From the NCBI GenBank assembly GCA_010909165.1, contig VJWM01000144.1:124001-188000 (forward strand): DNA of 64,000 nt, written 5' to 3'. Below the pieces are notes generated by a model. That model was not told the origin of the DNA. It saw only the letters and a program-made list of their open reading frames with translations, and searched no databases. The DNA comes from Anthoceros angustus (lineage: Eukaryota > Plantae > Anthocerotophyta). How positions within the stretch are numbered: position 1 is the first letter of the stretch; each line of letters starts with the position of its first letter. Of this stretch, positions 1-64,000 are shown piece by piece. A program made the position numbers and the translations under genes.

Positions 1-2266
1 AGCGATCACTATGGGAAAGCTGATGAGCAAGGCAGACTATGCACTGACGAACTTTGCAACGCAGGAGGAAGTGGCTGACATCCCTGTTGAGGTTGATGGT
101 GTGGTCTTTCATCTTAGTGACACTGACTTGGAACTGTACCCTTACGAGGAGACCCAAGTGATGGGTAAGATTGTTCAGACTCTGAATGATCATTTCCAAG
201 GTGTAGAGAAGCGGACTGGTGTGGATGATGAGAGCTGGCACACTTCCTTCGAGAAATTTCTCATGGCATTGGCTGATAGACGGAGGAGCAGAATTCTGGA
301 ATGGCTCAGGTGCAACACAACAGATTTTCCGGAGGATGGTGACGTTCAGAAGCTTCGTTTGGAAGCTATTGCCACGCTGGCAGAAGTGAAGCAGAGCCTG
401 TCCCTGTGTAGCTGCAAGTGCGAGAAGTGTTTCCTGAGATGCGTTCTTGAGAAAGGTCATCCAGGCCTGCACACGTGCAGGGGGAAGCATTACTGCTCGG
501 ACGTTTGTACGTTTTGCTCTGAGGAGCAATTGACGAGCTTGCTGTCTAGTGCGTGTGGCCATCTCTCGGGACATGAAGGTCCACACGACTGTAAGTGCAG
601 AAGTCACACTTGTGCAAAGGATTGTTCTCTTCTCAAATCATCCAACTGCAACCGGACCTGTGCTATGAAGCCTGGACATGCTGGAGAGCACAGATGCAAC
701 ACGAAGCAGCACGTGTGTGCAGAGAAGTGTTCTCTATCGGAGTGTAACAACCTCTGCACTTTCAGTGTTGATTGTGGAGAACACGATGAACATGTTTGTC
801 ATGAAAGGATGTGTCCCATGACGTGCATCGTGGACGGATGCAACAGGAAGTGCATATTCGAGGACCACTTTCATTCTCTTACCTCTGCTGGGCATTTCTG
901 GTAACGAACACACTTGCAAGGCGCAGTGTGAGGATGATGGAATATGCGAGATTCTGACAGAGGTGGTGAAGAAGTCCAAGGTTTTGTAGGGAAGCGATCT
1001 TCTTTTGAATACGAGCATGTGTCGGAGCAGGATGGGATCAGGAAAGGTTGCTGTATCCTGATTCCACCCTGGGAGGCTAAACACGAGGGCCGGCACTGCC
1101 ACACTGTCAACCCCAATGCAGTACACTTTTGCACCACAAGATGTCCTGCTTGTGCATACTTCTGCAATCTTCCCATTGGGCATCTGGGCTTACATGACAC
1201 CACACACGGAAACATGAGAGACGTCAATTTCGTGGCAGAGTCAGAGGACATCGACCTTGTGGACAGGAAATATGCTTGGGGAGAATCCGGTGTGGCCGAG
1301 ATGTGCGTTGTACATTGTAAAACCCAGCGGCACATCCACTTGGTCAGGTCTGGTGCCCATGGTGGAAGCAAGGAGGGCAAGGCATCAGACTGGACGGCAT
1401 GGGCCTGAGACGACTGTCCCCAAAGATGAAATGAGCCACACAGCTTACTGGAGGCACTTGAGGTTCAAGGATCCCTGCGCGGGACCAGAGGCAGGTCGAG
1501 ATGTGTCGCTCGGAAGATCATGCATCTGCAACCGCGGCATCGCGACAGCGATCCTACTGCACTGAGAAGTTGTGGCACAAACCTGTCAGGAGTACAGGAT
1601 CTACAACTATGGAAGGGTATGCGACGGAGAACGGCCATGCCGTGGCTGCAACAAGATGAAAATGCTCCATGCCACCTAGTGTTCGTCATCGACAGGTCCT
1701 ACTCTATGGGCTCTAGATGTGAAGCCAACACTGGCAAGATTTGCAGCCCTCAACAACCGGCTGGGCTGCGTGTACGAAGCCGTCACCCGATTCATCCGGA
1801 CTCGGATTGCAGATGGTCAGCTAGATGTGGTATCCATAGTCCTCTTCCGCCAGCCAAGCCATCATCGCCGTGGAGAGACAGCCCATTTCTGAGAACCTTC
1901 TAGATGGTCTCCCGCAACACTCCAAGATCCGTGGAGGCGCCATCTACTCATGCGGCCTGGATCTGGTACAGCAGATTCTACAGCGAGCTTCTGCGGATGC
2001 CTCGATCCTAGGCAAGCAGCCTGCTGTCATCTTCCTGAGTGGCGGCGCAAATTGCGGTGTCACGGATCCGGTGGCCATGGTGAAGAAGATGAAAGACCGC
2101 GACAACAATCTCGTCTTCCACACGATCTTCCGTGCAGACAATAAGGACGAGGAGACATTGCAGAGGATGGCAGCCTCCGGCGCGGGAAGTACCAGGTCTG
2201 CATCCACGGAGTGCAGCTAACAAGGAGCTTTGAAGGTTTAGCCAAGAGTTTGAGGACATGAGGTAG
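1..2266 (+). pseudogene. Giant GTPase-ZnF-vWA gene, copy 0 (3' part only; 5' end lies outside the window); vWA end degenerate
   Basis: ORFs 11-904, 944-1408, 1520-1903 and 1870-2220 are collinear with copy 1 from about 9519 onward. Near-identical up to about 1300, then divergent. MIDAS motifs are altered (DRSYS, LSGG) and there are many frame breaks, some of which may be sequencing error. Confidence 0.7.
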
Positions 2267-4603: not shown

Positions 4604-7600
4604 ATGGGAGGAGGTCCAGAACTGTTGGAGGGAGCGTCGGAATTGAGCGGCGATGAGGTTTTGACCCCCGCGTGGCCTGATACCGAAAGCGGTGTAGCTC
4701 ACTCAGGGGAGTTCATATCAGTAAGGAGCAGTGGGGATGCGGCAATGGCGCTCCCTCTAATTTGTGTTGCATCCTCGCCTGTGAGCCAGCGGGTTGAAAC
4801 AATTGATTCCCTCGTTTTGCGAGGGGAAGACGGGGAGGTTGATGTAGCCGACGCTGGTGAGTGCGGTTCTCCTCCTGTTGTTGTTCCTCACCCTGTCTTG
4901 GAGGTTGAGGCCGTTGGAGCTGAAACTGCATCCCTGGTGGGGTTGGAAGATGACCGGGAGAAGGTTGAGAGAGTTTCCGTTCCCCGAATGTGAGGCCGGG
5001 GTTGCGAAGGTGTTACCTGATGCTAGCAGCGATGCAAGTGTTGAGGCCGACTCTGCACAGGCTCATGCACCTGAGGGATGATAAGCTGGATCAGAGCTGT
5101 GGAGAAGGTCGTCTTACCCAGACGAGATTGTGAAGTTCTGCAATGAGGTCAGACTGAAGTCAGCAGCGTGTCGTGATGGAAAGACGGTGCTGGATTTCAA
5201 TGCGTTGAACAACGAATCTGTACACGCTGTGGGATCAGGCGGGAGCAAGAAAATTCGCCTGAATTTTCTCGGAGCTTGGGTTGCAGACTGTGGTGTCCTC
5301 GATGCTTGGCCTCTTGATGTAGGGATTTATGGCTTTCTTCATCAGGGAGTATTGTTCATCTTCTATTGGCATGAGGGTGAGCGAATGCTTGAGGCCTCCA
5401 GGAAGGATGTGTCTTGCAACTTCATTCGTTATGTGGCGGACTTGTGTGCCACTGTTTACATCTGCCTGGACGATGAAAATGACGTGGATTTGTCTCTCAT
5501 GACCTCGGGGCACTCTACTGCTGCCTCTATAAAGCAGCGTACGCGGAGGCTGCAGATAGCTAAGGTCAGGCAGTCAGAGAACGATTTGAAGCTGCGGAAA
5601 GGCTTTCACAACTGTTCTTCTATCCTCACAGGGAAGAAGCCAGGCAATGTCGAGACATCTTCCTGCTCGGAGCGTGGTCTCAGACTTGCGGGCGGTCTTC
5701 ACCGTTGCGTTTTTCTTACTTCATCACGTGTCCCTCCTAAGAAAGTTTTGAATCCACATCAGAAGACTGTGGAGATTCGAAACTTTGCAAAGCTTGTTGA
5801 GGAATGGTGCTTCCGCTAATCTTGACTTCATTCAACTACCTCACCGTGACTTTTGCCTGTTTCTAGAGCATGCTGGTCTTGAAGGAGCAGAGACTATCGC
5901 GCGCTGAAGGATTCCTTCGAAGTACGAAGAAAATCTCTAAAGGAAAAGTTTTACAACTTAGAGGAGCGCTTGCAGGATGAAGAAAAGAAGATTTTGAATA
6001 TTCTAAACGGAGTTCAAAATGCGTACTTGAAGCTTTACCATCCATGGGCTGAGAGCCTTGTTGCGACCTCTGAGGTTGACTCGTCCGGTGGAGCCTCCTC
6101 ACCCGTGCAGAGTGCGTTCGAACCCAACGATGTGCTTCAGGCAGAAGCTGCCCTGGTTAACATCTGGACAGGTGACTGTGCGGTTCAAGCAGGAGAAAAG
6201 TCTGAATCTTTCATTTTTGTTGGCACACAATTCCGAATGATCATGGCCGACGGGACCTCATGGCGCACTGAGAGCTATGACACTGACGAGTTCATCGTGG
6301 TTAGCTTTTCCTCAGCACGGTCTTCAAGATCGGCAGGGCCTATCCTTTATGGGGAGGAATTTGTGGCCATAGCCAGAGGCGTTGTAGCAGAGAACCAGAT
6401 TAAGCTTACGTGCAAGGCTCTGAATGAGAATTTTCCGGAAGGTCCTGTGTTAACGTCTCGATATATGAGCGTCACCATCCAGCATGTCAGTATCCAAAAT
6501 CGAAGTATTAAGAAAGTGGCCCAATTGATGCTTAGTACAGGAGGACCATCAGGCGAAGGGATGCTTGCATGGATGGAGTCATATGGCAAGCCTGTTGTCC
6601 ACCCTATCCAAGAAAGCATCGATACTCTGGTCTCTGCAGTTGAAAATTCTTCGATCAACAGTGACACCATCGTTGCTCGAGTTTTACAAGCTGCACACGA
6701 GGTCTTGAAGTCGTCTGAGCTTCTCATCCAATTTAAGAAGCGATATTCAAAGCAAGTTATGGCGCAATTGTTGAAGGAAAATGAAGTGAACATGGACTCC
6801 AAAAGCCCCACCCAGGAGGCGGAAAACGCGTTCAACCTCGTTGCCCCTGAGGAGAGGGAACTACTCCTGCAACTGGTGCGGAAGGTTTATGTTGAAGCCC
6901 GTGTTGAATTTTCGCGCGCAGTACAGACAATGGTGAAGAAGGAACTATGCCCCATGTTGATGAAGAAGATGGAGTTTGAAGCAAAGCATAATACCACTTT
7001 CCTAGAGCAGTCCTTTCGAAAGGAGGAAAGGGAATTTGTGACTAGCTTGCAGCAGCAGCTGTCCAGAGGGACACTTCGAGAGCGTCGTCTGTCTGTCCGA
7101 AGTTGTATCTTTCAGCGTGGTGTGAAAGAGACCTTCCAACCTAAAGCTTTACTTAAAACTATCGGTTTGCTTCGCAGCTCAGAAGGTAAAAGCTGTGACA
7201 AGCTGGAGGTTCATTTTTTGTTGGAAGAACCAGACAGTGAGCGGCTCGCGTGGACCATAGCTGAGCTTACACCGATGAAGAAAGATTTGGACGCTTTCAT
7301 GTGCGACTCCGGGCACCTCATCATCCCAAAATGTTCGGAAAACCACAGGTTGATTGAGGTCGACCCAAACTTACAGAGGCTATTTCAAGTAGTTGCGGTG
7401 AAATCTGGTGAAGTTTTAGTGTTCGTGGAGCATCTTGAAGAGCCAGCAGTTCATCTCTACGTGCTCTCGAGGTTGGGTGTAGAGATACAAGGCATGAATT
7501 CCGTCAAGAGATTCAAAAGAGGTTACGACCTTATGGCTGTGGACGAAGTCTCGAAATTTGTTGGCCTCTATGATAGGAAAATGGAAAAAATCGAGATCCT

Positions 7601-10600
7601 GCGCCTTGACGAATCCTTCCGCCATACGGAGTGGTCTGGAGTTACCCTGCAACTGTCCGAGTACTGCGGAATTCAACCCTTAACTTCAATCTGCTTTGTC
7701 CCTGGCAGGAAAGAAATGGTTGTAGTCGACGAAGAATCCAAAGTTCGGGTCTTCGAGATCAGTCAACCTGCGATGCTGCGACCAGGGCATATGCAGTTAC
7801 CTGGTCGTGCCCATAAGATTTGTGTGTCTACAGATGGATCTTGTTTAATGGCTTTCTACAAGGCTCTTCCAGACGGACCTTCGGAAGCAGCAGAGGGGAT
7901 GACGGAGAGTAGTGACGAGAGCGAAGATACAGAGCCTGAAATGGACGAGTCTGCTGAAGGCTCTTTGAAGATTGAGGTCTACATGCTTGGCGAATCAATA
8001 TGTCATCTCAAGACACTCTTCCTTGGCTACGCAGTAGCAGACGTAAGAAGCATTGATGCAGCTGTAGTGGCCTTCGGATCACAGGTCCATCTCGTACTTC
8101 TGGATTCTTCCAGGCCGGAGAAAGGAATATGGTCAAACGTCATCGAGATCACATCGGCTTCCGAAGTCTGCCAGCTGCAACACATGTACAGAGGTCAGCA
8201 AACTGGTATTTGCTCTGCAAGCACTCTAAAAAGTAGGCATGGCTGTCCGGCTTTGGATTATGTTTACCAGATGTTTGAGAAGTATGCGACGAGTCCCCCT
8301 TTGATCCAAAAGACCAGGTATCTCCATCTCCATCTGGTGTTCGCTGGCGAATCCAAGGAGAAACTGGAGGCTTTGAAGGACAGCTCTGTGAGTTACGTGA
8401 AAGGTTCCATGGACAAACTGGCACGAGATAAAGGAAAAGATTTCTCGCAGCTAAAGTTAGCTGTTTCCGCAGGCACGGTGGATAGCTACATCGTCCATAA
8501 TTTTCTTGTGCAGAGCACGGAAGACAGGAACAGTGCGGATCTCGGGGATTGGGTGCGGCTACTGGTTTGCCTTGTGCCCATTCAAATAGCCCGAGCTGAA
8601 AACAATACCTTGCGGCCTTTGGTGAACGGTCTGCAGAATCCCAGCCTTACTTATGCAGATGCTGTGGGGCTTGCTGAGGCTCTACGATTTGGTTTCTATG
8701 ACTCCGTATTAGCCCACTGGTCTGGGAATATCAAAGTGATATCGTCCATGGGAAAGCAAAGCAGTGGAAAGTCCTACCTGCTCAACCATTTGGCCGGCTC
8801 GTTACTCGATGTGGCTGCAGGCAGATGCACGGACGGAGTATGGATGACTATGCGGGCATCGGAAAGCTGCTTATATGTCCTTCTGGACTTCGAGGGCCTG
8901 GGAAGCTTTGAGAGAAGCGAGCAGGAGGATATGCTCCTCTCTATTCTGAATGCAGCTGTAAGCAACACCATATTCAACAAAACGGTAAGACATCCAATCT
9001 GACCTTGTGGATTGGTCATTATGATGCGTGGTGCCGTAACACATAGGGCTGACCCCATGATGTGGACAGGATTTTCATCTGGACAAGGAAACAGAAGCCG
9101 TGTTTGAACGCTTTCAGAATGGCGTCAGCTTGGTAAAGCAGGACAGCCGGCTCTTTAAGGGCCTCTTTTACATGGCCATCAAAGACGTGGATACATCAGA
9201 CGTGGATGACTTGAAAGAGGAGTTCTCAGCGAAAATACAGCAAATATGTAACAAATCGCCAGACAACTTTCTCACAAAGATGTACGGCGGGGCGGTTGAG
9301 ATAGCAGCAATGCCACCCTTCCAAAGGTCGGAATATCACGAGAGCGTTGCTGAGGTAGCTGCAACTGTGGAGGAATTGGAATCGGTCCACCATAATGGGA
9401 ATAGTCTCGCAGTAGACCTGAAGCTGGTAATAGCTCAGATCACCGCCAAGGATTGGTCTCCAATCGACTCGAAGCGCTTAGCTTTGAAACTGGAACTCCT
9501 GAAAAGACACATGAATGCAGCGATCACTATGGGAAAGCTGATGAGCAAGGCAGACTATGCACTGACGAACTTTGCAACGCAGGAGGAAGTGGCTGACATC
9601 CCTGTTGAGGTTGATGGTGTGGTCTTCCATCTTAGTGACACTGACTTGGAACTGTACCCTTACAAGGAGACTGAAGTGATGGGTAACATTCTTCAAACTC
9701 TGAATGATCATTTCCAAGGTGTAGAGAAGCGGACTGGTGTGGATGATGAGAGCTGGCACACTTCCTTCGAGAAATTTCTCATGGCATTGGCTGATAGACG
9801 GAGGAACAGAATTCTGGAATGGCTCAGGTGCAACACAACAGATTTTCCGGAGGATGGTGACGTTCAGAAGCTTCGTTTGGAAGCTATTGCCACGCTGGCA
9901 GAAGTGAAGCAGAGCCTGTCCCTGTGTAGCTGCAAGTGCGAGAAGTGTTTCCTGAGATGCGTTCTTGAGAAAGGTCATCCAGGCCTGCACACGTGCAGGG
10001 GGACACATTACTGCTCGAAGGTTTGTACTTTTTGCTTGGAGGAGCAATCAGCAGGTTTGCAGCCTAATGAGTGTGGCGATCTCTCGGGACATGAAGGTCC
10101 ACACGACTGTAAGAGGCAGAGGCACACATGTGTCATGGATTGTTCTCTTCTCAAATCATCCAACTGCAACCGGACCTGTGCTATGAAGCCTGGACATGCT
10201 GGAGAGCACAGATGCAACACGAAGCAGCACGTGTGTGCAGAGAAGTGTTCTCTATCGGAGTGTAACAACCTCTGCACTTTCAGTGTTGATTGTGGAGAAC
10301 ACGATGAACATGTTTGTCATGAAAGGATGTGTCCCATGACGTGCATCGTGGACGGATGCAACAGGAAGTGTGGGTTCGAGGACCACTTTCATTCTCTTAC
10401 CTCTGCTGGGCATTTCTGCGGTAACGAACACACTTGCAAGGCGCAGTGTGAGGATGATGGAATATGCGAGATTCTGACAGAGGTGGTGAAGAAGTCCAAG
10501 GTTTTTGTAGGGAAGCGATCTTCTTTTGAATACGAGCATGTGTCGGAGCAGGATGGGATCAGGAAAGGTTGCTGTATCCCGATTCCACCCTGGGAGGCTA

Positions 10601-11871
10601 AACACGAGGGCCGGCACTGCCACACTGTCAACCCCAATGCAGTACACTTTTGCACCACAAGATGTCCCGCTTGTGCATACTTCTGCAATCTTCCCATTGG
10701 GCATCTGGGCTTACATGACACCACACACGGAAACATGAGAGACGTCAATTTCGTGGCAGAGTCAGAGGACATCGACCTTGTGGACAGGAAATATGCTTGG
10801 GGAGAATCCGGTGTGGCCGAGATGTGCATGATGCACTGCAAAATCCAAGGCCGCGGGCACATCCACTTGGTCAGGTGCCGTGCCCATGGTGGAAGCATGG
10901 GTCCGTCCAAAGGTTTCTGTAAGGAAGGAATTCATGAGGGAACAAGGCATCAGACCCGAAAGTACGGGCCTGACAACGCTGTCCCCAAAGATGAAATGAG
11001 CCACACAGCTTACTGGAGGCACTTGAGGTTCAAGGATCCCTGCCGAGAAGACGATCAGAAGGAGTTTGAGATGTGCAACCACTACTGCCGCTCGGAAGAT
11101 CATGCTTCCGCAACCGCAACCTCGCAACAGCGATCCTACTGCACTGAGAAGTTGTGGCACAAACCTGTGAGCAGGACAGGAACGACTTCCAGCGCAGGGT
11201 ATGTGACGGAGGACGGTCATGCGTTCGGCTGCAATCACATGAAGAATGCTTCAAGCCATGTGATGTTCGTCATCGACAGGTCAGGCTCCATGGGTTCGTC
11301 AGACGTGAGGCCAACACTGGCTAAGTTTGCAGGCTCCTCCAACAACCGCCTGGGATGCGTGTACGAAGCCGTCACCCGCTTCATCCGGACCCGGGTTGCA
11401 GGAGGGCAGTCGGATGTGGTGTCCATTGTCCTCTTCGACCACCTGGCCACCATAGCAGTGGAGAGGCAGCCCATCTCGGAGAGACTTGTAGACAATCTCC
11501 TCCACCACTACAGAGTCGGTGGAGGCACCGTCTACTCAGCCGGCCTGGATCTGGTTCAGCAAATTCTGCATCGAGCTGCACTGGATGCGTCTATGCAAGC
11601 CAAGCACCCTGCAGTCGTCTTCTTGAGTGATGGTGGGAATGGGGGTGGTACTGAGCCGGTTACCATGGTGAAGAACATGAAGGACGTCGACCACAAGCTT
11701 GTCTTCCACACCATCCTCTTCGGAGCAGACCATTCCCAGGAGCAGAGATTGAAAAGGATGGCATCCGCAGGCGGGGGGACGTACCAGGTCAGCATCGACG
11801 AAGTGCAGCTCGCAAGGACCTTTGAAGGTTTAGCCAAGAGTCTGAGGCCGAAGGTTGCTTCCCTCATGTAA
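4604..11871 (+). CDS. Giant VLIG/GBP-superfamily GTPase with beta-propeller-like region, Cys/His zinc-finger-like repeats and C-terminal vWA; copy 1 (most intact, about 2,400 aa)
   Basis: ATGGGAGGAGGTCC start shared with copies 2 and 3. ORFs 5970-9002 and 9100-11871 join in frame through the intron 8985-9069. G1 GKQSSGKS at 8751-8774, RCTDGVWM, DFEGLG, IKD; Cys/His repeats about 9925-10740; vWA DRSGS...GGT...LSDG about 11250-11860. A few frame breaks at 4990-5900. Confidence 0.88.
8985..9069 (+). other. 85-nt phase-0 GT-AG intron inside the GTPase domain (copy 1)
   Basis: ACG|GTAAGA ... GCTGAC ... CAG|GAT. Splicing gives NTIFNKT-DFHLDKETEAVFERFQ, in frame with the ORF starting at 9100. Confidence 0.85.
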
Positions 11872-13740: not shown

Positions 13741-14027
13741 ACAGCGTATCCTGAGTCCTGATTTGTCTTCCCTTCCAGTCTTCCAGTGTCCACCTAGTCG
13801 CGAAGTGCCGGGCCAAAACCACGACGACTGCTTCTTGTGCTTGCAGCCGTTTTCTGAGTTGCCACTCGCTAGTAGCTGGGGGATCTGCAGGCAGAGCTCG
13901 TCAAGCTCGTGAGATAGGTTGGTTGAGAGCTTGATTCATGACGCTACTTCACTTGTCTGCGGTTTAGCCATCGAAGCACACTGACTGACACGTACCCTTG
14001 CTTGAAGCAGCAGGTTCCGGAGCTGTC

Positions 14028-17000
14028 ATGGGAGGAGGTCCGACGGAACCGTTGGAGGAAGTGGAATTGAGCGACGATGACAGTGTGGCTCCACGCGGCC
14101 TGACACCGAAAGAGGTCTTGCTGACCCAGGGACTCCAGATCAGTGATGACCTTTTCGGCGCCAGGAAGGGACGCGGCAGTGACGTTCCCTCCGGTGTGTG
14201 CTGGATCCTCACCTGCCAGGCCGGCCGTTGAGACGCTCGACTCCCTCGTTTTGAGATGTGAGGAAGGGAGAATGATGCATTGGACAGAATGGAGTGCGAT
14301 TCTCCTGTTGTTGTTGTTTCTGAGCCTTTTTGGGGTTGAGGCCGTTGCTAATGAAACCGCACGCCTGACGGACTTGGAGGATGTCGGAGAGGAGCTTGAA
14401 GGTGTCCCTCGGAATGTCGTGCGAGAGGTTGGAAAGGTGTCACCTGATGCTGGCAGCGATGCAACTGTAGAGGGCCCCACTTTGCACAGGTTCATGCACG
14501 TCAGGGCGGACAAGCTGGACCAGAGCTTTGTTGAGAAGGTCATCTTACCTCCGGATGAGATTGAGAAATTCTGCAATCACGTCAGGCTCAACTCAGCGGC
14601 ATGCCGTGATGGAAAGACGCTGCTGGATTTCAATGCCTTGAACTATGCGTCTGTCCACGTTGTAGGACTGTATGGAAGTAAGAAGGTGCTCGCTCGAATT
14701 TTCTCGAAGCTTGGGTTTCAGAGCGTGGTGTCGTCGATGCTTGGCCCTCTGGATGTAGGGATTTATGGCTTTCTTCATCAGGGCGTATTGTTCATTTTCT
14801 ATTGGCATGAGGGTGAACGAATGCTGGAGGCCTCCAGGAAGGACGTGTCTTGCAACTTCATTCGTTGTGTTGCAGACTTATGTGCGACTGTCTACATCTG
14901 CCTGGACGATGAAAACGATGTGGCCTTGTCGCTCATGACCTCCGGCGCTCTATTGCTGCCTCTAAAACGCAGCGTACGCAGAGGGTGCAGATATCAGTGG
15001 TCAGGAGTCAGAGAACGATGTGAAGCTGCGCAAGGGCTTTCACAATCGTACTTTATTCTTCTCGAGGGAGAAGCCAGGCAATGTCCAGCCATCTTCCTGC
15101 TCGGAGCCAAGTCTCAGACTTGCTGGCGGTCTCCACCGTTGCGCTTTTCTCACTTCATCAGTTGTCCCTCCTAAGAAAATTGAGACGAGTCATCACAAGG
15201 TACTGGAGTGTCAACACTTGGCGCAGGTTGTTGAGGAATGGTCGGGCCTCTTCAATCTTGACTTCACTCAGCTAGATTACCTCGAATTTGGCCTGTTTTA
15301 GAACATGCGGGTCTTGAAGGAAGCAGAGACTATCGCTTGCTCAGGGAGTCCCTCGAAGCAAGAAGAAAAGCTCAACATGGAAAGTTCTACGAGGTGGAGA
15401 AGCTTTTACAAGAGAAAGAAGAGACGCTTCTGAGCATCTTCAGCGGAGCTCAGCAAGCGTACTTGAAGCTCTATCACCCATGGGCAGAGAATCTGGTTGC
15501 TGCCTCTGAGGTTCACCCTTCTGGTGTTGCCTCCTTATGCACGGAGTGTTCGTTTGAACCGAATGATCTGTTTGAGGCAGAAGCGGCCCTGGTTAACATC
15601 TGGACAGGTGATGGTGGCCTTCAACCAGGAGAAGATTCTCAATGTTTGATTTTTGTGGGCACAGAATTCCGAATGTTAAAGGCCGACGGGACTACAGTGG
15701 TAAGCAAGGGTGTTGACGAATTCATCGTGCATCGAATTTCCTCAACACGATCTTCAAGATCGGCAGGGCCGATCCGTTGTGGGGAGGCATTTGTGGTCAG
15801 ACCCAAAGGTGCTGGAGCAGAGGACGATCTTGAGCTGACATGTAAGGCTGTGAAGGAGGATTTCCCTGAAGGTCCAGTTTTAACGTCTCGAATTATGGAA
15901 GTCACCATCAACCATGTCGGTACCCGAAGTTGCTTTAAAGTGATGCTTATCAAAGAAAAACCCTCAGGCGAAGGGATGCTAACATGGATGGAGGCATATG
16001 GCAAGCCTGCTGTGCTTCCTATCGGGGAAAGAATCGATGCTCTGGTCTCTGCACTCAAAAACCCTTCGGTGAACAGTGATGGCATCCGTTCTCGAGTTTT
16101 ACAGTATGCACAGGAGATCGTGATGTCGTCTGATCTTTTCAGCCTGTTCAAGGAGCGATTTTCAATACAATCTCTGGCGCAGATTCTGATGGAAAACTCG
16201 GAATGCTGCAGGAGAGGTGTATCTGAGAGGACCTCTCAGGCCGTGGAAGCTCCGATCGACAAGTTCACCCCTGAGGAGGAGGAACTACTGCTGGAACTGG
16301 TGCGAAGGATTTACGTTCAAGCCCTTGCTGAATTTTCGAGCGCATTAGAGACAATGGTGAAGAAAGAAGTAGTCCCCTTGTTGAAGAAGAAGATCGAGTT
16401 TGAAGCAAAGCGTAACACTAACTTCTTCAAGCAGTCCTTCCAAAAGGAGGAAAGGCAATTCCTGACCAGGTTACAAGAGCAGCTGTCCAGGGGGACACTT
16501 CGAGAACATTGTTTGTCCGTCCGAAGGTGTACCCTTCAGCGTGGTCAGAAAGAATCCGTTGTTGCTAAAGCTGTCAATTTTCTTTCAGGCCGCAGTGACA
16601 AGCTGGAGGTTTATTTTGTGTCAGAGCAAACAGACAGTCAGCGAATCGCCTGGAACATAGCCGAGCTTACACCAATGAAGAAGGACCTGGACGCTGCCAT
16701 GTGCACCTGGGCACCTCATCATTCCCCAGTGTTCGGAAAACTACAGGTTGATTGAGGTCGATCCACACTCAGAGAGGCTATTTCAAGTAGTTGCGGTGAA
16801 ATCTGGTGAAGTTTTAGTGTTCGTGGAGGATCTTAAACAGCCAGCAATTCATCTCTACCTGCTCCCGAGCTTGGGTGTAGAGATACAAGGCATGAATCCC
16901 GTCAAGAGATTCAAAAGGGGTTACGACCTTGTGGCAGTGGATGAAGTTTCAAAACTTGTTGGTCTGTATGATAGGGGATTGGCCAAAATTGACATCCTGC

Positions 17001-20000
17001 ACCTTGATGAATCCTTCCGCCACATGGATTGGTCTGGAGTTACGCTGAATCTTTCCGAGTACATCGGAATGAGGTTCTTAACTTCGATGTCCTTCAGCCC
17101 TGGCAGGAGAGAATTGGTGCTGGTGGACGAAGAATACAAAGTTCGGGTGTTCGATATCAGCACTGCCATGCTGAAGCCAGGGGATATGCAGTTACCTGGT
17201 CCTGCCCATAAGATTTGTGTTTCCACAGATGGATCTTGTTTAATGGCCTTCTATAAGTCCCGTCCAGACGGACCTCCGGAAGCAGCAGAGGGGTTGACGG
17301 AAAGCAGTGACCAGAGTGAACATAGAGGGCCTGGAATGGACGAGTCTCCTGAAGGTTCTTTAAAGATTGAGGTCTACTTGCTTGGCGAATCAGTATGTCA
17401 TCTCAAGACACTCTACCTTGACTACGAAGTAACAGATGTAAGAAGCATTGATGCAACCGTGGTAGCCTTCGGATCACAGGTCCATCTCGTACTTCTGGAT
17501 GCGTCAAGGCCGGACAGAGGCATATGCTCAAACGTCATTGAGATCACAACGGCCTTGGACGTCTGCCAGGTGCAACATATGCACAAAGGTCGACAAACTG
17601 GCATTGCCTCTGAAAGCACTGAAAAGGGTGGCCATGGCTGTCCGGCTTTGGACTATATATCAGATATTTGAGAAGTATTCGACGAGTGCCCTCTCATCCA
17701 GAGGACAAGAGATTTGCATCTGCATGTGGTTTTGCTGGAGAATCCAAGGAAAGCCAGGAGGCCTTGACGCAAGGCTCTGTGACTTACATCAAAGGTTCCA
17801 TGGACAAGCTGGCGAGAGATAAAGGGAAAGATTTCTCGCAGCTGAGGTTAGCTGTTTCCGCAGGCTCCGTGGATAGCTACATCGTCGATAACGTTCTTTT
17901 GGAGAGCACGGAAGGTAGAAACAGTGCGAATGTAGGAGACTGGATACGACTACTTGTTTGCCTCGTGCCAATTCAAGTAGCCGAGCTGAGAACAATACCT
18001 TGCGGCCTTTGGTAGACGGTCTGCAAAATCCCAACCTGAATTATGCAGATGCACTGGGGCTTGCTCAGGCGATTTGGGTTCTACGACTCCGTGTTAGCCC
18101 ATTGGTCTGGGGATATCAAAGTGATATCGTCCATGGGTAAGCAGAGCAGTGGCAAGTCCTACGTGCTCAACCATTTGGCTGGTTCGCTACTCGATGTGGC
18201 TGGAGGAAGATGCACAGACGGAGTATGGATGACTATGCGTGCATCGGAAGCTGCTTGTATGTTCTCCTTGACTTTGAGGGCCTGGGAAGCTTTGAGAGAA
18301 GCGAGCAGGAGGATATGCTCCTCTCTATTCTAAATGCAGCCGTGAGCAACATCACCATATTCAATAAAAGGTATGACATCCAATCTGACATTGTCAATTC
18401 GGTAATGATCATGAGTGGTACCATAACACACAGGGCTAACTACATGATCTGGACAGGATTTTCATCTGGACAAGGAAACAGAAGCTGTCTTTGAGCGCTT
18501 TCAGAATGGCGTAAGCTTGGTGAAGCAGGACAGCCGGCTCTTCAAGGGCCTCTTCTATATGGCCATCAAAGACGTGGATACATCAGACGTCAATGACTTG
18601 AAAGCAGAGTTCTTAGCGAAGATACAGCAAATATGTCACAAATCTCAGGACAACTTTCTTACAAAGATGTACGGAGGGGCAGTTGAGATAGCAGCGATGC
18701 CACCCTTCCAAAGGCCCGAATATCAGGAGAGTGTTGCCGAGATAGCTGCAACTGTAGAGGAATCGGAAGCTGTCCACCACAATGGCAACAGCCTCGCAGT
18801 AGACCTGAAGCTGGTAATAGCTCAGATAACTGCTAAGGATTGGTCTCCGATTGACTCAAGCGCTTAGCTTTAAAACTGGAGCTCCTGAAGAGACACATGA
18901 CTGCAGCAGTTACTATGGGAAAGCTGATGAGCAAGGCAGACTATGTCCTGACAAACTTTGCAACGCAGGAGGAAGTGGCTGATATCCCTGTTGAGGTTGA
19001 TGGTATGGTCTTCCATCTTAGTGACACTGACTTGGAACTGTACCCTTACAAGGAGACTGAAGTGATGGGTAACATTCTTCAAACTCTAAATCACTATTTT
19101 CAAGGAGTAGAGAAGCGGACCGGTGTGGATGATGACCGTTGGCACACGGCGTTCGAGAAATTTCTCATGGCATTGGCTGATAGACGGAGGAAGAGAATTA
19201 TGGAATGGTTAAGATGCAACACAGCAGAGTTCCAGCAGGAGGATGGTGATGTTCAGAAGCTTCGTTTGGAAGCCATTGCCACATTGGCGGAGGTCAAGCA
19301 GAGTCTGTCCCTGTGTAGCAGCAAGTGCGAGAAGTGTTTTCTGAGATGCGTTCTTGATAAAGGTCATCCAGACCAGCATACCTGCAGGGGGAACCATTAC
19401 TGCTCGGCAGTCTGTACGTTTTGCCTTCAGGAGCAATCAACAGGCTTGCAGTCTAATGAGTGTGGCGATCTCTCGGGACATGAAGGCCCACACGACTGTA
19501 AGTGCCGGAGCCACACATGTGCGGAGTCTTGTTCTCTTCTCAAATCATCCAACTGCAACCGGACCTGTGCCATGAAGCCTGGACATGCTGGAGAGCACAG
19601 ATGCAACACGAAGCAGCACGTGTGCAGAGAAGTGTTCTCTATCGGAGTGTACCAACCTCTGCACTTTCAGTGTTGATTGTGGAGAACACGATGAACATGT
19701 TTGTCATGAAAGGATGTGTCCCATGACGTGCATCGTGGACGGATGCAACAGGAAGTGTGGGTTCGAGGACCACTTTCATTCTCTTACCTCTGCTGGGCAT
19801 TTCTGCGGTAACGAACACACTTGCAAGGCGCAGTGTGAGGATGATGGAATATGCGAGATTCTGACAGAGGTGGTGAAGAAGTCCAAGGTTTTGTAGGGAA
19901 GCGATCTTCTTTTGAATACGAGCATGTGTCGGAGCAGAATGGGATCAGGAAAGGTTGCTGTATCCCGATTCCACCCTGGGAGGCTAAACACGAGGGCCGG

Positions 20001-21413
20001 CACTGCCACACTGTCAACCCCAATGTAGTACACTTTTGCACCACAAGATGTCCCGCTTGTGCATACTTCTGCAATCTTCCCATTGGGCATCTGGGCTTAC
20101 ATGACACCACACATGGAAACATGAGAGACGTCAATTTTGTTGCAGAGTCAGAGGACATCGACCTTGTGGACAGGAAATATGCTTGGGGGGAATCTGGTGT
20201 GGCAGAAATTTGCCACATGCACTGTAGATCCCAAGGCCGCGGTCACATCCACTTGGTCGAGTGTGGTGGCCATGGAAGGAAGGGTCTGGTCAAAGGCGTC
20301 TGTGGGAAGAGAGCAAGGCATCAGACCCGACAGTATGAGCGGCTCTATAAGAACGGACTTCTGGAGGCACCAAGATATCAGACCCGACAGTATGAGCGGC
20401 TCTGTAAGAACGGAATTCTGGAGGGAGCAAGGCATCAGACCCGACAGTATGAGCGGCTATGTAAGAACGGAATTCTGGAGGGAGCAAGGCATCAGACCAG
20501 AGAGTATGGTCCTGACACGACTGTCCCCAAAGATGAAATGACCCACGCAGCTTACTGGAGGCACTTGAGGTTCAAGGATCCCTGCCGAGAAGACGATCAG
20601 AAGCAGTTTGAGATGTGCAACCACTACTGCCGCTCGGAAGATCATGCTTCCGCAACCGCAACTTCGCAACAGCGATCCTACTGCACTGAGAAGTTGTGGC
20701 ACAAACCTGTGAGCAGGACAGAAACGACTTCCAGCGCAGGGTATGTTACGGAGGACGGTCATACGTTCGGCTGCAATCACATGAAGAATGCTTCAAGCCA
20801 TGTGATGTTCGTCATCGACAGGTCAGGCTCCATGGGTTCGTCAGACGTGAGGCCAACACTGGCTAAGTTTGCAGGCTCCTTCAACAACCGCCTGGGATGC
20901 GTCTACGAAGCCATCACCCGCTTCATCCGGACCCGGGTTGCAGGAGGGCAGTCGGATGTGGTGTCCATTGTCCTCTTCGACCACCTGGCCACCATAGCAG
21001 TGGAGAGGCAGCCCATCTCGGAGAGTCTTGTAGACAATCTCCTCCACCACTACAGAGTCGGTGGACGCACCTTCTACTCAGCCGGCCTGGATCTGGTTCA
21101 GCAAATTCTGCATCGAGCTGCACTGGACGCCTCTATGCAAGCCAAGCACCCTGCAGTCGTCTTCTTGAGTGATGGTGGGAATGGGGGTGGTACTGAGCCG
21201 GTTACCATGGTGAAGAACATGAAGGACGTCGACCACAAGCTTGTCTTCCACACCATCCTCTTCGGAGCAGACCATTCCCAGGAGCAGATATTGAAAAGGA
21301 TGGCATCCGCAGGCGGGGGGACGTACCAGGTCAGCATCGACGAAGTGCAGCTCGCAAGGACCTTTGAAGGTTTAGCCAAGAGTCTGAGGCCGAAGGTTGC
21401 TTCCCTCATGTAG
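14028..21413 (+). CDS. Giant GTPase-ZnF-vWA gene, copy 2 (chimera of a copy-3-type 5' part and a copy-1-type 3' part); many single-base frame breaks
   Basis: ORF fragments 14143-15174, 15337-16755, 16748-17671, 18517-18867, 18897-19676 and 19851-21413 are collinear with copy 1; GKQSSGKS, RCTDG, DFEG and MIDAS are present. Whether it is intact or a pseudogene cannot be resolved from this consensus. Confidence 0.75.
18371..18456 (+). other. 86-nt GT-AG intron, copy 2
   Basis: AAAAG|GTATGA ... GCTAAC ... CAG|GATTTTCAT, at the same position as the copy 1 intron. Confidence 0.8.
20311..20509 (+). repeat. In-frame 57-bp (19-aa) tandem repeat, 3.5 units
   Basis: Units start at 20311, 20368, 20425 and 20482 and encode (GARHQTRQYERLCKNGILE)n. 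Confidence 0.92.
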
Positions 21414-44169: not shown

Positions 44170-44441
44170 GACAGCGTTACCTGAGTCCTGAGTTGTCTTC
44201 CCTTCCAGTCTTCCAGTGTCCACCTAGTCGCGAATTGCCGGGCCAAAACCACGACGACTGCTTCTTGTGCTTGCAGCCGTTTTCTGAGTTGCTGGGATCT
44301 GCAGGCAGAGCTCGTCAAGCTCGTGAGGTAGGTTGGTTGAGAGCTTGATTCATGACGCTACTTCACTTGTCTGCGGTTTAGCCATCGAAGCACACTGACT
44401 GACACGTACCCTTGCTTGAAGCAGCAGGTTCCGGAGCTGTC

Positions 44442-47400
44442 ATGGGAGGAGGTCCGACGGAACCGTTGGAGGAAGTGGGAATTGAGCGACGATGACAGTG
44501 TGGCTCCCACGCGGCCTGACACCGAAAGAGGTCTTGCTGACCCAGGGGACTCCAGATCAGTGATGACCTTTTCGGCGCCAGGAAGGGACGCGGCAGTGAC
44601 GTTCCCTCCGGTGTGTGCTGGATCCTCACCTGCCAGGCCGGCCGTTGAGACGCTCGACTCCCTCGTTTTGAGATGTGAGGAAGGGAGAATGATGCATTGG
44701 ACAGAATGGAGTGCGATTCTCCTGTTGTTGTTGTTTCTGAGCCTTTTTGGGGTTGAGGCCGTTGCTAATGAAACCGCACGCCTGACGGACTTGGAGGATG
44801 TCGGAGAGGAGCTTGAAGGTGTCCCTCGGAATGTCGTGCGAGAGGTTGGAAAGGTGTCACCTGATGCTGGCAGCGATGCAACTGTAGAGGGCCCCACTTT
44901 GCACAGGTTCATGCACGTCAGGGCGGACAAGCTGGACCAGAGCTTTGTTGAGAAGGTCATCTTACCTCCGGATGAGATTGAGAAATTCTGCAATCACGTC
45001 AGGCTCAACTCAGCGGCATGCCGTGATGGAAAGACGCTGCTGGATTTCAATGCCTTGAACTATGCGTCTGTCCACGTTGTAGGACTGTATGGAAGTAAGA
45101 AGGTGCTCGCTCGAATTTTCTCGAAGCTTGGGTTTCAGAGCGTGGTGTCGTCGATGCTTGGCCCTCTGGATGTAGGGATTTATGGCTTTCTTCATCAGGG
45201 CGTATTGTTCATTTTCTATTGGCATGAGGGTGAACGAATGCTGGAGGCCTCCAGGAAGGACGTGTCTTGCAACTTCATTCGTTGTGTTGCAGACTTATGT
45301 GCGACTGTCTACATCTGCCTGGACGATGAAAACGATGTGGCCTTGTCGCTCATGACCTCCGGGCGCTCTATTGCTGCCTCTAAAACGCAGCGTACGCAGA
45401 GGGTGCAGATATCAGTGGTCAGGAGTCAGAGAACGATGTGAAGCTGCGCAAGGGCTTTCACAATCGTACTTTATTCTTCTCGAGAGAAGCCAGGCAATGT
45501 CCAGCCATCTTCCTGCTCGGAGCCAAGTCTCAGACTTGCTGGCGGTCTCCACCGTTGCGCTTTTCTCACTTCATCAGTTGTCCCTCCTAAGAAAATTGAG
45601 ACGAGTCATCACAAGGTATTGGAGTTTCAACACTTGGCGCAGGTTGTTGAGGAATGGTCGGGCCTCTTCAATCTTGACTTCACTCAGCTAGATTACCTCG
45701 AATTTGGCCTGTTTTAGAACATGCGGGTCTTGAAGGAAGCAGAGACTATCGCTTGCTCAGGAGTCCCTCGAAGCAAGAAGAAAAGCTCAACATGGAAAGT
45801 TCTACGAGGTGGAGAAGCTTTTACAAGAGAAAGAAGAGATGCTTCTGAGCATCTTCAGCGGAGCTCAGCAAGCGTACTTGAAGCTCTATCACCCATGGGC
45901 AGAGAATCTGGTTGCTGCCTCTGAGGTTCACCCTTGTGGTGTTGCCTCCTTATGCACGGAGTGTTCGTTTGAACCGAATGATCTGTTTGAGGCAGAAGCG
46001 GCCCTGGTTAACATCTGGACAGGTGATGGTGGCTTTCAACCAGGAGAAGATTCTCAATGTTTCATTTTTGTGGGCACAGAATTCCGTATGAGAAATGCCG
46101 ACGGGACTACAGTGCTAAACAAGTACAGTTACATTGACAAATTCATCGTGCATCGAATTTCCTCAAAACGGTCTTCAAGATCGGCAGGGCCGATCCATTA
46201 TGGGGAGGAATTTGTGGTCAGACCCGAAGGTGCTGGAGCAGAGAACGATCTAGAGCTGACATGCAAGGCTGTGAAGGAGGATTTCCCTGAAGGTCCAGTT
46301 TTGACGTCTCGAATTATGGAAGTCACCATCAACCATGTCGGTACCCGAATTCGAAGTCATAAGAACTTCAAAGTGATGCTTATCAAAGGAAAACCTTCAG
46401 GCGAAGGGATGCTAACATGGATGGACGCATATGGCCAGCCTGCTGTGCTTCCTATCGGGGAAGAATCGGTGCTCTGGTCTCTGCACTCAAAAACCTTCGT
46501 TTAACAGTGATGGCATCCGTTCTCGAGTTTTACACTATGCACAGGAGATCGTGATGTCGTCCGATCTTTTCAGCCTGTTCAAGGAGCGATTTTCAATACA
46601 ATTTTCTGGCGCAGATTCTGATGGAAAACTCGGAATGCTGCAGGAGAGGTGTATCTGAGAGGACCTCTCAGGCCGTGGAAGCTCCGATCGACAAGTTCAC
46701 CCCTGAGGAGGAGGAACTACTGCTGGTACTGGTGCGAAGGGTTTACGTTCAAGCCCGTGCTGAATTTTCGAGCGCATTAGAGACAATGGTGAAGAAAGAA
46801 GTAGTCCCTTGTTGAAGAAGAAGATCGAGTTTGAAGCAAAGCGTAACACTAACTTCTTCAAGCAGTCCTTCCAAAAGGAGGAAAGGCAATTCCTGACCAG
46901 GTTACAAGAGCAGCTGTCCAGGGGACACTTCGAGAACATTGTTTGTCCGTCCGAAGGTGTACCCTTCAGCGTGGTCAGAAAGAATCCGTCGTTGCTAAAG
47001 CTGTCAATTTTCTTTCAGGCCGCGGTGACAAGCTGCAGGTTTATTTTGTGTCAGAGCAAACAGACAGTCAGCGAATCGCCTGGAACATAGCCGAGCTTAC
47101 ACCAATGAAGAAGGACCTGGACGCTGCCATGTGCAATTCCGGGCACCTCATCATTCCCCAGTGTTCGGAAAACTGCAGGTTGATTGAGGTCGATCCACAC
47201 TCAGAGAGGCTATTTCAAGTAGTTGCGGTGAAATCTGGTGAAGTTTTAGTGTTTGTGGAGGATCTTAAAGAGCCAGCACTTCATCTCTACCTGCTCCCGA
47301 GCTTGGGTGTAGAGATACAAGGCATGAATCCCGTCAAGAGATTCAAAAGGGGTTACGACCTTGTGGCAGTGGATGAAGTTTCAAAACTTGTTGGTTTGTA

Positions 47401-63647: not shown

Positions 63648-64000
63648 CCAAAGATGAAATGACCCACGAGGCTTACTGGAAGCACTTGATGTTCAAGGAT
63701 CCCTGCCAAGAAGATGATCGGAAGCAGTTCAAGATGTGCAGCCACCACTGCTGCTCGAAGATCATTCATCTGCAACTGGGACCACGCAACAGCGATCCTA
63801 CTGCACTGAGAAGTTGTGGCACAAACCTGTGAGCAGGACGGGATCCACTTCCAGCGTAGGGTACGTGTCGGAAGATGGCCATGCCTTCGAGTGCAGTCAC
63901 TTGAAATATGCTCCAAGCCATGTGGTGTTCGTCATCGACAGGTCTGGCTCTATGGGCTACAGACGTTAAGCCAACACTGGTGCAATTTGCAGCCTCCTTC
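63648..64000 (+). other. Fragment of the GTPase gene (pre-vWA linker and start of vWA), near-identical to copy 3 50814-51168
   Basis: Begins abruptly at CCAAAGATGAAATGACCCACGAGGC, fused to the transposase remnant; runs off the window. Confidence 0.9.

What the first reader, a model, noticed from the sequence alone, without database searches (positions are those of the whole stretch)
4604..11871. Tandem array of giant VLIG-like GTPases with beta-propeller, zinc-finger array and vWA: candidate uncharacterised plant cell-autonomous immune system
Seen: a roughly 2,400-aa gene in at least six full or partial copies across the window, with G1 GKQSSGKS, AGRCTDGVWM, DFEG, a WD40-like region, Cys/His repeats and a MIDAS vWA, next to a land-plant PPR gene. 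Established: AGRCTxG plus DxEG marks the GBP/atlastin/RHD3/VLIG superfamily and is closest to VLIG (GVIN1-type); animal GBPs and VLIG are interferon-induced host-defence GTPases. Inference: this architecture is not that of the plant GBPL or RHD3 proteins I know. Tandem birth-and-death, chimerism and local hypervariability resemble NLR clusters, suggesting a sensor-effector immune GTPase family.
Basis: partly seen in the sequence, partly recalled or inferred. Interest (0 to 1): 0.9.

Follow-up and report, generated by a model that had tools for sequence, protein, structure and literature searches.

The report
Tandem giant GTPase–zinc–vWA genes
This plant locus holds six tandem, recombining copies of a roughly 2,370-residue soluble GTPase related to animal defence GTPases; the family is real, found across eukaryotes but not seen in flowering plants, and I found no paper on it, so an immune role is plausible but untested.

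Summary
Six same-strand copies of one giant gene lie in the window. Copy 1 (4604-11871) is the best preserved.

Its parts, in order:
- a conserved N-terminal domain of unknown fold
- a variable helical stretch
- a beta-propeller (AlphaFold2 and Foldseek)
- a GBP/RHD3/VLIG-type G domain split by an 85-nt intron
- a helical region
- a Cys/His-rich region with 66 conserved Cys/His positions
- a C-terminal vWA domain with a complete MIDAS motif

The family is not plant-specific. Full-length relatives, all annotated "hypothetical", occur in liverworts, mosses, lycophytes, ferns, gymnosperms, red algae, oomycetes, mushrooms, chytrids, amoebae and an acoel. No angiosperm or prokaryote relative appeared. 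Land-plant members form one clade that follows plant phylogeny.

The G domain scores best against URGCP/VLIG but below that family's threshold. No membrane segment exists, so it is not an RHD3/atlastin-type fusogen.

The copies are mosaics. Copy 2 is 97% copy-3-like over 6.8 kb and then 96.5% copy-1-like. They diverged under purifying selection (G domain dN/dS about 0.1).

Many frame breaks sit in homopolymers and may be assembly errors. No RNA evidence was obtained. The immune reading rests on analogy only. The scan noted the same gene type on two other pieces of this genome.

The parts
2..2255 (+). Copy 0: 3' part of a copy, cut by the window start. Its G/helical part is 96% identical to copy 1. 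Its vWA part is only 48% identical (dS 1.35).
4604..5806 (+). Copy 1 exon 1. It starts at an ATG encoding MGGG, as in Calypogeia and Ginkgo homologues. It covers a variable acidic N-terminus and the conserved N-terminal domain (about 5130-5600; motifs FYWHEGE and SRKDVSCNFIRY). As assembled it is broken by small indels between about 4969 and 5310.
   Evidence: Contigs of run X2 add GG after 5044 and TT after 5097.
5807..5884 (+). Inferred intron 1 (78 nt, GT..AG). It removes the in-frame stops at 5817 and 5880.
   Evidence: Read from the sequence. The boundaries are conserved in copies 2 and 3. Not confirmed by RNA.
5885..8984 (+). Copy 1 exon 2: variable helical region, beta-propeller (about 7224-8156), pre-G domain, and the G-domain N-half with G1, switch I and G3 (8715-8984).
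8985..9069 (+). Intron 2 (85 nt, GT..AG) inside the G domain.
   Evidence: The spliced reading TIFNKT|DFH matches Cryptomeria TIFNKKDFH.
9070..11871 (+). Copy 1 exon 3: G-domain C-half and helical region (9070-9906), Cys/His-rich region (about 9925-11259), vWA with MIDAS (about 11239-11859), then the stop codon.
14027..21413 (+). Copy 2, a chimera. Positions 13624-20394 are 97.1% identical to copy 3, and 20460-21532 are 96.5% identical to copy 1. An in-frame 159-nt tandem-repeat insertion lies at the switch point. It has at least 9 private and 13 copy-3-shared frame-breaking indels.
44441..51694 (+). Copy 3, full length. It has 19 private frame-breaking indels, nearly all 1-nt losses in homopolymer runs.
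52406..56351 (+). Copy 4, internally deleted. It lacks the G1-G3 part and much of the Cys/His region, so it is a likely pseudogene.
63648..64000 (+). Copy 5: a fragment spanning the end of the Cys/His region and the start of vWA. It is 99.2% identical to copy 3 at 50814-51169.

Best explanation
What it is (about 0.9 sure): a tandem, recombining cluster of a conserved nuclear gene family of eukaryotes. Each gene encodes a soluble protein of about 2,370 residues. Its order is N-terminal conserved domain, variable helical region, beta-propeller, GBP/RHD3/VLIG-type G domain, helical region, Cys/His (zinc) region, and vWA with MIDAS.

How it most likely works (inferred, about 0.4 sure): it acts like the GBP and GVIN1 large GTPases. 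GTP binding would drive pairing of G domains and assembly into oligomers or coats. The propeller and the MIDAS vWA would be the binding surfaces that select a target or partner. The zinc-rich region and the lineage-variable N-terminus (RING/B-box, SAM or C2 in some protists) would link assembly to downstream signalling such as ubiquitin.

I read the repeated lineage-specific amplification, tandem arrays, exchange of 3' cassettes and losses in whole clades as signs of a surveillance or defence role. Only the domain content, the family's range and the array's history are shown. GTPase activity, assembly, ligands and any defence role are inferred.
For: - G domain: G1, switch I and G3 are invariant across the family. 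Pfam scores are URGCP 33.6-44.3, RHD3 24.6-33.8 and GBP 22.6-30.4 bits. The family profile hits GBP5/2/1 (E 2.6e-12 to 6e-9) and Sey1 (6e-8) among solved structures.
- Other domains: propeller, vWA with MIDAS, 66 conserved Cys/His positions. No membrane segment is present; the highest 19-residue hydropathy is 1.41.
- Range: the family is pan-eukaryotic with its architecture conserved from the N-domain to the vWA. Land plants form one clade (SH-aLRT 100) that tracks plant phylogeny.
- Amplification recurs: here, in Cryptomeria (consecutive SUGI_06909xx-06915xx tags), in Ceratopteris, and as an Imleria tandem pair.
- Selection: paralogues diverged under purifying selection. dN/dS is about 0.1 in the G domain, 0.4 in the propeller, and 0.6 in the N-variable and Cys/His regions. 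dS is mosaic, from 0.02 to 1.35.
- Chimeras are seen, and N-terminal RING/B-box, SAM and C2 variants exist.
- Functional precedent: GVIN1 and GBP1 coat cytosolic bacteria (bioRxiv 10.1101/2025.03.24.645074).
Against: - No transcript evidence: the one RNA run listed held none of the locus.
- No domain-wide dN/dS exceeds 1.
- Deep conservation of the whole core, with few copies apparent in oomycetes, fits a conserved cellular job as well as it fits defence.
- The position of the GBP arginine finger is Gln here (alignment), so the catalytic mechanism may differ from that of GBPs.
- Every copy but one has many frame breaks as assembled.
- The N-terminal domain and the Cys/His region match no known family, so the effector step is a guess.
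Confidence: 0.42

Rival explanations
1. Conserved non-immune cellular machine. The family does an old housekeeping-like job, for example GTP-driven assembly in ubiquitin/proteostasis, nucleic-acid handling or organelle dynamics. The local array would be neutral duplication with gene conversion.
For: The whole core architecture is conserved across eukaryotic supergroups and inherited vertically. Purifying selection acts on every domain. The nearest vWA structural neighbours include TFIIH p44 and proteasome Rpn10. RHD3/Sey1, a housekeeping relative, is the only outside family reached by the family profile in the large protein search.
Against: The family was not seen in angiosperms and appeared in only one animal (an acoel) among the hits listed, which is unusual for core machinery. 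Independent amplifications occur in several lineages. N-terminal domains are swapped. The vWA cassettes of neighbouring copies are very divergent (48% identity). No membrane anchor is present, so it is not an RHD3-type fusogen.
Confidence: 0.35
2. Decaying array. Most or all copies in this window are pseudogenes left by birth-and-death, and no functional product comes from here.
For: Copies 2 and 3 carry 22 and 32 frame-breaking indels relative to the three-way alignment, 13 of them shared. Copy 4 lacks the G1-G3 part. Copy 1's exon 1 is not one open frame as assembled. No RNA contig was laid on the locus.
Against: Copy 1 keeps uninterrupted ORFs of 1010 and 923 codons. G-domain dN/dS is about 0.1 between copies. 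Private indels are almost all 1-nt losses in homopolymers, which is the pattern of long-read consensus errors, and they are worst in the 97%-identical pair that is hardest to polish. Two of the copy-1 breaks are contradicted by independent contigs of the same organism, and those changes restore the motif SFVEKV..LP shared with homologues. Earlier notes on this genome report the same kind of assembly breaks.
Confidence: 0.18
3. Transposon-borne or captured gene, amplified by a mobile element rather than by the host.
For: Copia-like gag/pol and integrase fragments and a DUF7869 transposase-like ORF lie between copies.
Against: The repeat unit holds only the gene plus about 0.4 kb upstream, with no transposase, LTRs or inverted ends at the unit borders in the self-comparison. 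The gene has spliceosomal-type introns. The family tree follows organismal phylogeny.
Confidence: 0.03

Closest known systems
VLIG / GVIN1 and URGCP (interferon-induced very large GTPases of vertebrates)
   Same: Both are giant soluble proteins of about 2,400 aa with a central G domain. URGCP_GTPase is the best-scoring Pfam model. UniProt's automatic rule names several homologues 'VLIG-type G domain-containing protein'. GVIN1 coats cytosolic bacteria, which gives a working model.
   Different: The score is below Pfam's threshold (33.6-44.3 against 55) and covers only profile positions 186-285 of 396. GVIN1 has no reported propeller, Cys/His array or vWA (my knowledge). No Pfam family, GVIN1_C included if that copy of Pfam holds it, matched the Cys/His region. 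The only hint was a weak language-model similarity of 0.35.
Guanylate-binding proteins (GBP1/2/5; plant GBPL)
   Same: These are the nearest solved structures to the family profile (E 2.6e-12 to 6e-9). The Pfam GBP model just passes its threshold (22.6 against 21.1). They share the P-loop, the TxGxW switch I and DxEG.
   Different: Only about 120 residues align. The GBP arginine-finger position is Gln. The protein is four times longer, with extra propeller, zinc and vWA modules. There is no CaaX box at the C-terminus (the sequence ends ..KVASLM).
RHD3 / Sey1 / atlastin ER-fusion GTPases
   Same: The RHD3_GTPase model aligns furthest into the G domain (positions 1-155 of 245 in Cryptomeria). 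An RHD3 protein is the only named outside family reached by the family profile (E 4.7e-6). The P-loop is of the GxQSxGKSxLLNHL type, as I recall for RHD3/Sey1.
   Different: No transmembrane hairpin is present. The score is below Pfam's threshold (24.6 against 42.4). The domain context is quite different.
NLR / STAND immune receptors, including fungal WD40-NLRs
   Same: The logic is similar: repeat or propeller sensor, NTPase switch, and variable N-terminal modules. The genomic behaviour is similar too: tandem arrays, birth-and-death and chimeras.
   Different: There is no NACHT or NB-ARC domain. The NTPase is a dynamin-superfamily GTPase, and the propeller lies N-terminal to it. This is resemblance in design only, not membership.

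Membership tests
GBP/RHD3/VLIG group of dynamin-superfamily GTPases | P-loop GxxxxGK[ST], switch-I Thr in a TxGxW context, and G3 DxxG | tested here: met
   GKQSSGKS, RCTDGVW and DFEG are read. G639, G644, K645, S646, R663, C664, T665, G667, W669, D684, F685, E686 and G687 are invariant in 58 sequences.
GBP/RHD3/VLIG group of dynamin-superfamily GTPases | G4 motif of the (T/A)(L/V)RD type | tested here: inconclusive
   A near-invariant I-K-D-V lies at the expected distance (D288 and V289). Its equivalence to the G4 motif was not shown structurally, because the window's G domain is split between two models.
VLIG/URGCP family (Pfam PF25683) | Score at or above the curated gathering threshold (55 bits) over the model | tested here: not met
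   33.6 bits for the window and 31-44.3 bits for intact homologues. Only profile positions 186-285 of 396 are covered.
VLIG/URGCP family | GVIN1-type C-terminal region | tested here: inconclusive
   No Pfam family matched window 9907-11244 at E up to 5, but I did not confirm that this copy of Pfam holds the GVIN1_C model. The only hint was a 0.35 feature similarity to a GVIN1_C cluster.
GBP (Pfam PF02263) | Score at or above the gathering threshold (21.1 bits) | tested here: met
   22.6 bits for the exon-2 part and 19.6-30.4 bits in the four homologues scanned (three of them above threshold). This is a marginal, partial match covering profile positions 19-95.
GBP | Catalytic arginine finger in the P-loop (GBP1 Arg48, from my knowledge) | tested here: not met
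   The HMMER alignment to GBP5 places Q of GkQStGKS opposite R of GLYRTGKS.
RHD3/Sey1/atlastin | C-terminal transmembrane hairpin that anchors the protein in the ER | tested here: not met
   The highest 19-residue Kyte-Doolittle mean is 1.41, and the protein ends in the vWA domain.
RHD3/Sey1/atlastin | RHD3_GTPase score at or above 42.4 bits | tested here: not met
   24.6 bits for the window and 24.2-33.8 bits for homologues.
vWA domain with MIDAS | vWA fold plus the DxSxS...T...D metal site | tested here: met
   VWA_2 scores 42.2 bits against a threshold of 27. VIA-align gives Z 22.6 at rmsd 2.0. D736, S738, S740, T820 and D854 are conserved. DRSGS, GGGT and SDGG are read.
WD40 beta-propeller | Beta-propeller fold | tested here: met
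   Model residues 130-440 have pLDDT above 90 and are all beta. Foldseek matches Vps11 WD40, LST8, WDR61 and G-beta at E 1e-8 to 1e-6. The blade number was not settled (23 strands).
WD40 beta-propeller | WD40 sequence repeats (Pfam) | tested here: not met
   No WD40 model hit at E up to 0.01.
NF-X1-type zinc fingers | Match to Pfam zf-NF-X1 | tested here: not met
   No Pfam family at E up to 5. The only hint is a weak language-model similarity of 0.45 to zf-NF-X1 clusters. Zinc binding itself cannot be tested here.
NLR/STAND receptors | NACHT or NB-ARC NTPase domain | tested here: not met
   Absent from the Pfam results for the window ORFs and for four full-length homologues.

The most novel reading that the evidence does not exclude
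This is an ancient branch of the GBP/VLIG defence GTPases, possibly as old as the last common ancestor of eukaryotes. It pairs a propeller sensor with a zinc/vWA assembly platform. It would act as a cell-autonomous immune sensor-effector in non-flowering plants, mushrooms, oomycetes and protists, would have been lost in angiosperms and most animals, and would be related to the ancestry of vertebrate GVIN1.
Probability: 0.25. Interest if true: 0.85.

Novelty: new variant of a known kind. Interest (0 to 1): 0.6.

Why it matters
Large GTPases of the GBP/VLIG kind are central to cell-autonomous immunity in animals. GVIN1 was only recently shown to coat bacteria. Plant immunity research is dominated by angiosperm models, and no angiosperm member of this family appeared in my searches.

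Here the G-domain type sits in a conserved architecture of about 2,300 residues, present from amoebae to conifers, with no paper found in nine literature searches. If the protein acts in defence, it would show that GTPase-based intracellular immunity predates animals, and it would give bryophytes, ferns, gymnosperms, mushrooms and oomycetes a shared, testable immune component. If it does not, it is still a large, old, unstudied eukaryotic protein with a striking zinc-rich domain.

The locus also documents cassette exchange between tandem paralogues. It is a caution too: the frame breaks in this assembly cannot be read as pseudogenisation.

Tried and rejected
RNA evidence
- The RNA search listed one run holding none of the sampled words, and laying it gave zero contigs. 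Expression therefore stays open.
- Run X2 (DNA contigs, same organism) could not serve as a gold standard. Its contigs are consistently shorter than the assembly, even inside copy 1's intact 1010-codon ORF. Applying its single-base losses destroys ORF A. Only its two 2-nt insertions, which run against that bias and match the paralogues, were taken as credible.
- Depth ratios hint at about 8-10 copies in this organism and about 40 in a related one. The tool warns that depth is not copy number, so I do not rely on this.

Searches that gave nothing
- Bacterial or archaeal relatives: none.
- Pfam at E up to 5 on the N-terminal domain and on the Cys/His region.
- ESM Atlas on the N-terminal domain: scores of 0.69 or less, uninformative.
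- PDB profile search with an N-terminal domain alignment.
- Structure searches with the exon-3 model were dominated by the vWA domain and gave no information on the Cys/His or helical parts.
- Nine literature searches, using family names, domain combinations, InterPro/Pfam/PROSITE ids and six locus tags, found no paper on this family. Kaur et al. 2020 (PMC7159879) does not mention GBP, VLIG or dynamin.

Not done
- A G-domain tree with GBP, atlastin, RHD3 and GVIN1/URGCP references could not be built, because no tool handed me those sequences and I did not type any from memory.
- An exon-1 splice between ORF A and ORF B was considered and rejected. That stretch is one open frame in copies 2 and 3, and it encodes a motif conserved in liverwort, Ginkgo and Riccia homologues.
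Full report
WHAT IS THERE

The window is nuclear DNA of a land plant. It carries a PLS-like pentatricopeptide-repeat gene at 57067-58176 and copia-like retroelement fragments. It also holds six same-strand copies of one very large gene.

tblastn with the copy-1 ORFs and self-blastn place the copies as follows:
- c0 at 2-2255 (3' part only, cut by the window start)
- c1 at 4604-11871
- c2 at 14027-21413
- c3 at 44441-51694
- c4 at 52406-56351 (internally deleted, without the G1-G3 part)
- c5 at 63648-64000 (fragment)

The finding's coordinates are exactly copy 1.

GENE MODEL OF COPY 1

Two long ORFs, 5970-9002 (1010 aa) and 9100-11871 (923 aa), are separated by an 85-nt GT..AG intron at 8985-9069. 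The spliced junction TIFNKT|DFH matches TIFNKKDFH in the Cryptomeria homologue.

A second, 78-nt GT..AG intron at 5807-5884 would remove the two in-frame stops between ORF B and ORF C and keep the frame. Its borders are conserved in copies 2 and 3, but it is inferred, not seen in RNA.

Upstream, ORF A (4604-4993) and ORF B (5130-5819) are one continuous frame in copies 2 and 3. The stretch between them encodes a motif, SFVEKV.LP..E, shared with liverwort, Ginkgo and Riccia proteins. Two of those proteins also start with MGGG, as copy 1 does. So exon 1 runs 4604-5806 without an intron.

In copy 1, as assembled, exon 1 is broken by several 1-2-nt indels. The three exons sum to 7102 nt, about 2,370 aa.

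HOW FAR THE FRAME BREAKS CAN BE TRUSTED

A three-way alignment lists 10 frame-breaking indels private to c1 (all in exon 1 or the introns), 9 private to c2, 19 private to c3 and 13 shared by c2 and c3. The private ones are almost all single-base losses in G, C or A runs. They are most frequent in the pair c2/c3, which is 97% identical and therefore hard to polish.

Contigs of an independent DNA run of the same organism (X2) add GG after 5044 and TT after 5097. These are exactly two of the c1-private gaps, and with them the reading becomes VEGPTLHRLMHLRDDKLDQSFVEKVVLP, homologous to copies 2 and 3 and to other plants.

X2 is not a gold standard. It is systematically shorter than the assembly, even inside the intact 1010-codon ORF, and its single-base losses destroy ORF A.

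Earlier notes on this genome also report assembly-type frame breaks. My reading is that copy 1 is probably intact, copies 2 and 3 cannot be judged, and copy 4 is dead. The only RNA run offered held none of the locus, so transcription is not shown.

DOMAINS

G domain. GKQSSGKS, AGRCTDGVWM and DFEG are present and invariant in 58 family members. Pfam scores for the exon-2 part are URGCP_GTPase 33.6 bits (threshold 55), RHD3_GTPase 24.6 (threshold 42.4) and GBP 22.6 (threshold 21.1). Intact homologues give URGCP up to 44.3, RHD3 up to 33.8 and GBP up to 30.4. A 56-sequence family profile hits GBP5/2/1 (E 2.6e-12 to 6e-9) and then Sey1 (6e-8) among solved structures. In that alignment, Gln sits where GBPs have the P-loop arginine. 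In the 5.8-billion-protein search the same profile found only family members, one unnamed 883-aa protein with GBP, RHD3 and URGCP Pfam hits (E 2.4e-8), and then one RHD3 (E 4.7e-6). So the G domain is a separate branch of the GBP/RHD3/VLIG group. URGCP/VLIG ranks first by a small, sub-threshold margin.

Propeller. The AlphaFold2 model of 6837-8984 (pLDDT 78) has an all-beta module at residues 130-440 with pLDDT above 90. It matches Vps11 WD40, LST8, WDR61 and G-beta. No WD40 Pfam repeat is detected.

Exon-3 model. The model has pLDDT 88.9 and pTM 0.70. It ends in a vWA fold (VIA-align Z 22.6) with the DxSGS, T and D residues of a MIDAS site.

Cys/His region. Between the helical region and the vWA lie 445 residues with 46 Cys and 38 His. 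Of these, 42 positions are invariant and 24 nearly invariant in 54 sequences from across eukaryotes. No Pfam model matches, even at E 5. A language-model search points weakly (0.45) to NF-X1-type fingers.

N-terminal domain. The conserved domain with motifs FYW and SRK..SCNF(I/L)RY matches nothing.

Membrane anchoring. No hydrophobic segment could span a membrane.

THE FAMILY

An exhaustive HMMER search with exon 3 found 1317 clusters, 347 of them below 1e-30. Many are 2,000-2,600 aa long. Named members are all "hypothetical" or "VWFA domain-containing". They come from:
- gymnosperms: Cryptomeria, Taxus, Ginkgo
- ferns: Ceratopteris, Adiantum
- a lycophyte: Selaginella
- a moss and liverworts: Ceratodon, Calypogeia, Riccia
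- algae: Galdieria, Mesostigma
- oomycetes
- Agaricomycetes and a chytrid
- Amoebozoa
- the protists Gefionella and Oxyrrhis
- an acoel

No angiosperm appears, even with a conifer query, and no prokaryote does either.

Homology runs from the N-terminal domain through the propeller to the vWA. A tree of 51 sequences puts all land-plant members in one clade (SH-aLRT 100). Within it, liverworts, a moss/lycophyte group that includes the window, ferns and gymnosperms are arranged roughly as the organisms are. Fungi and oomycetes each form their own clade. This is vertical descent with losses, not transfer.

Amplification recurs. Cryptomeria has many genes with consecutive locus tags, Ceratopteris has four, and Imleria has a same-strand tandem pair. 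Some protist members carry B-boxes and a RING, or SAM plus C2, at the N-terminus.

HISTORY OF THE ARRAY

Copy 2 is 97.1% identical to copy 3 over 6.8 kb, including about 0.4 kb upstream. It then switches to 96.5% identity with copy 1 for its last 1.07 kb. A 159-nt in-frame tandem insertion lies at the switch.

Copy 0 is 96% identical in protein to copy 1 in the G/helical part but only 48% identical in the vWA, where dS is 1.35.

Pairwise dN/dS is 0.09-0.11 in the G domain, about 0.4 in the propeller, and about 0.6 in the N-variable and Cys/His regions. It is never above 1.

Copies 2 and 3 differ sharply only in a patch at about 15620-16000 and at the 3' switch. Tandem birth-and-death and cassette exchange are therefore real. 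Diversifying selection is not demonstrated.

INTERPRETATION

The domain set and the family are solid. For function I commit to a GBP/GVIN1-like mechanism. GTP would drive G-domain pairing and self-assembly of a soluble giant protein. The propeller and the MIDAS vWA would bind targets or partners. The zinc-rich region and the variable N-terminus would couple to downstream signalling.

The only functional anchor is by analogy. GBP1 and GVIN1 coat cytosolic bacteria (bioRxiv 10.1101/2025.03.24.645074).

The main rival is a conserved non-immune role, which the deep conservation and purifying selection fit equally well. A decaying array and a transposon-borne gene are less likely, for the reasons given under the rival explanations.

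OTHER COPIES IN THIS GENOME

The scan noted the same gene type on two other pieces of this genome. I did not examine them.

Noticed in passing
window 57067-58176 (+): A PLS-like PPR gene (Pfam PPR and PPR_2; repeated MYAKCG...VFD motif). It is spread over three reading frames, so it is either frame-broken or hit by the same assembly indels.
   Followed up: partly
window 20301-20476 (+): Copy 2 has a 159-nt in-frame insertion made of about three tandem units of roughly 53 nt. It sits in the linker before the vWA domain, exactly where its similarity switches from copy 3 to copy 1.
   Followed up: partly
window 33610-40393: A retroelement nest. A roughly 2-kb unit is repeated three times in tandem (91-97% identical). 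There is also a gag zinc-knuckle/Pol_BBD ORF (39725-40393, minus strand) and an integrase fragment (35352-35693, minus strand).
   Followed up: no
window 60178-61009 (+) and 62922-63269 (-): A further integrase/SH3_retrovirus fragment and a DUF7869 transposase-like ORF lie between the PPR gene and the last GTPase fragment.
   Followed up: no
window 26149-26983: A simple-sequence tract encoding His/Pro/Thr-rich (HPHPHIPTS-like) or Gly/Trp/Met-rich peptides, depending on strand. It has strong GC skew and is probably a microsatellite, not a gene.
   Followed up: no
P0179-P0183 (609-645 aa): Short relatives exist in databases that hold only the pre-G and G domains and part of the helical region, without the Cys/His region or vWA. 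P0179 stands for 37 member sequences. They may be a truncated subfamily or partial gene models.
   Followed up: no
P0207, P0015, P0016, P0208, P0203, P0021, P0011: Protist members of the family carry extra N-terminal modules: B-boxes plus a RING (TRIM-like), or SAM with or without C2. This hints at links to ubiquitin and membrane signalling.
   Followed up: partly
window 5254-5309 (+): Relative to copies 2 and 3, copy 1 lacks 2 nt at 5254 and 1 nt at 5309. This pair keeps ORF B open but would put about 18 codons out of register. It is possibly a hidden assembly error inside an apparently intact ORF.
   Followed up: no
window 13244-13738 and 43392-44100: Upstream of copies 2 and 3 lies a short repeat, present once at 13244-13738 and several times in tandem at 43392-44168. 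It may be promoter-proximal.
   Followed up: no
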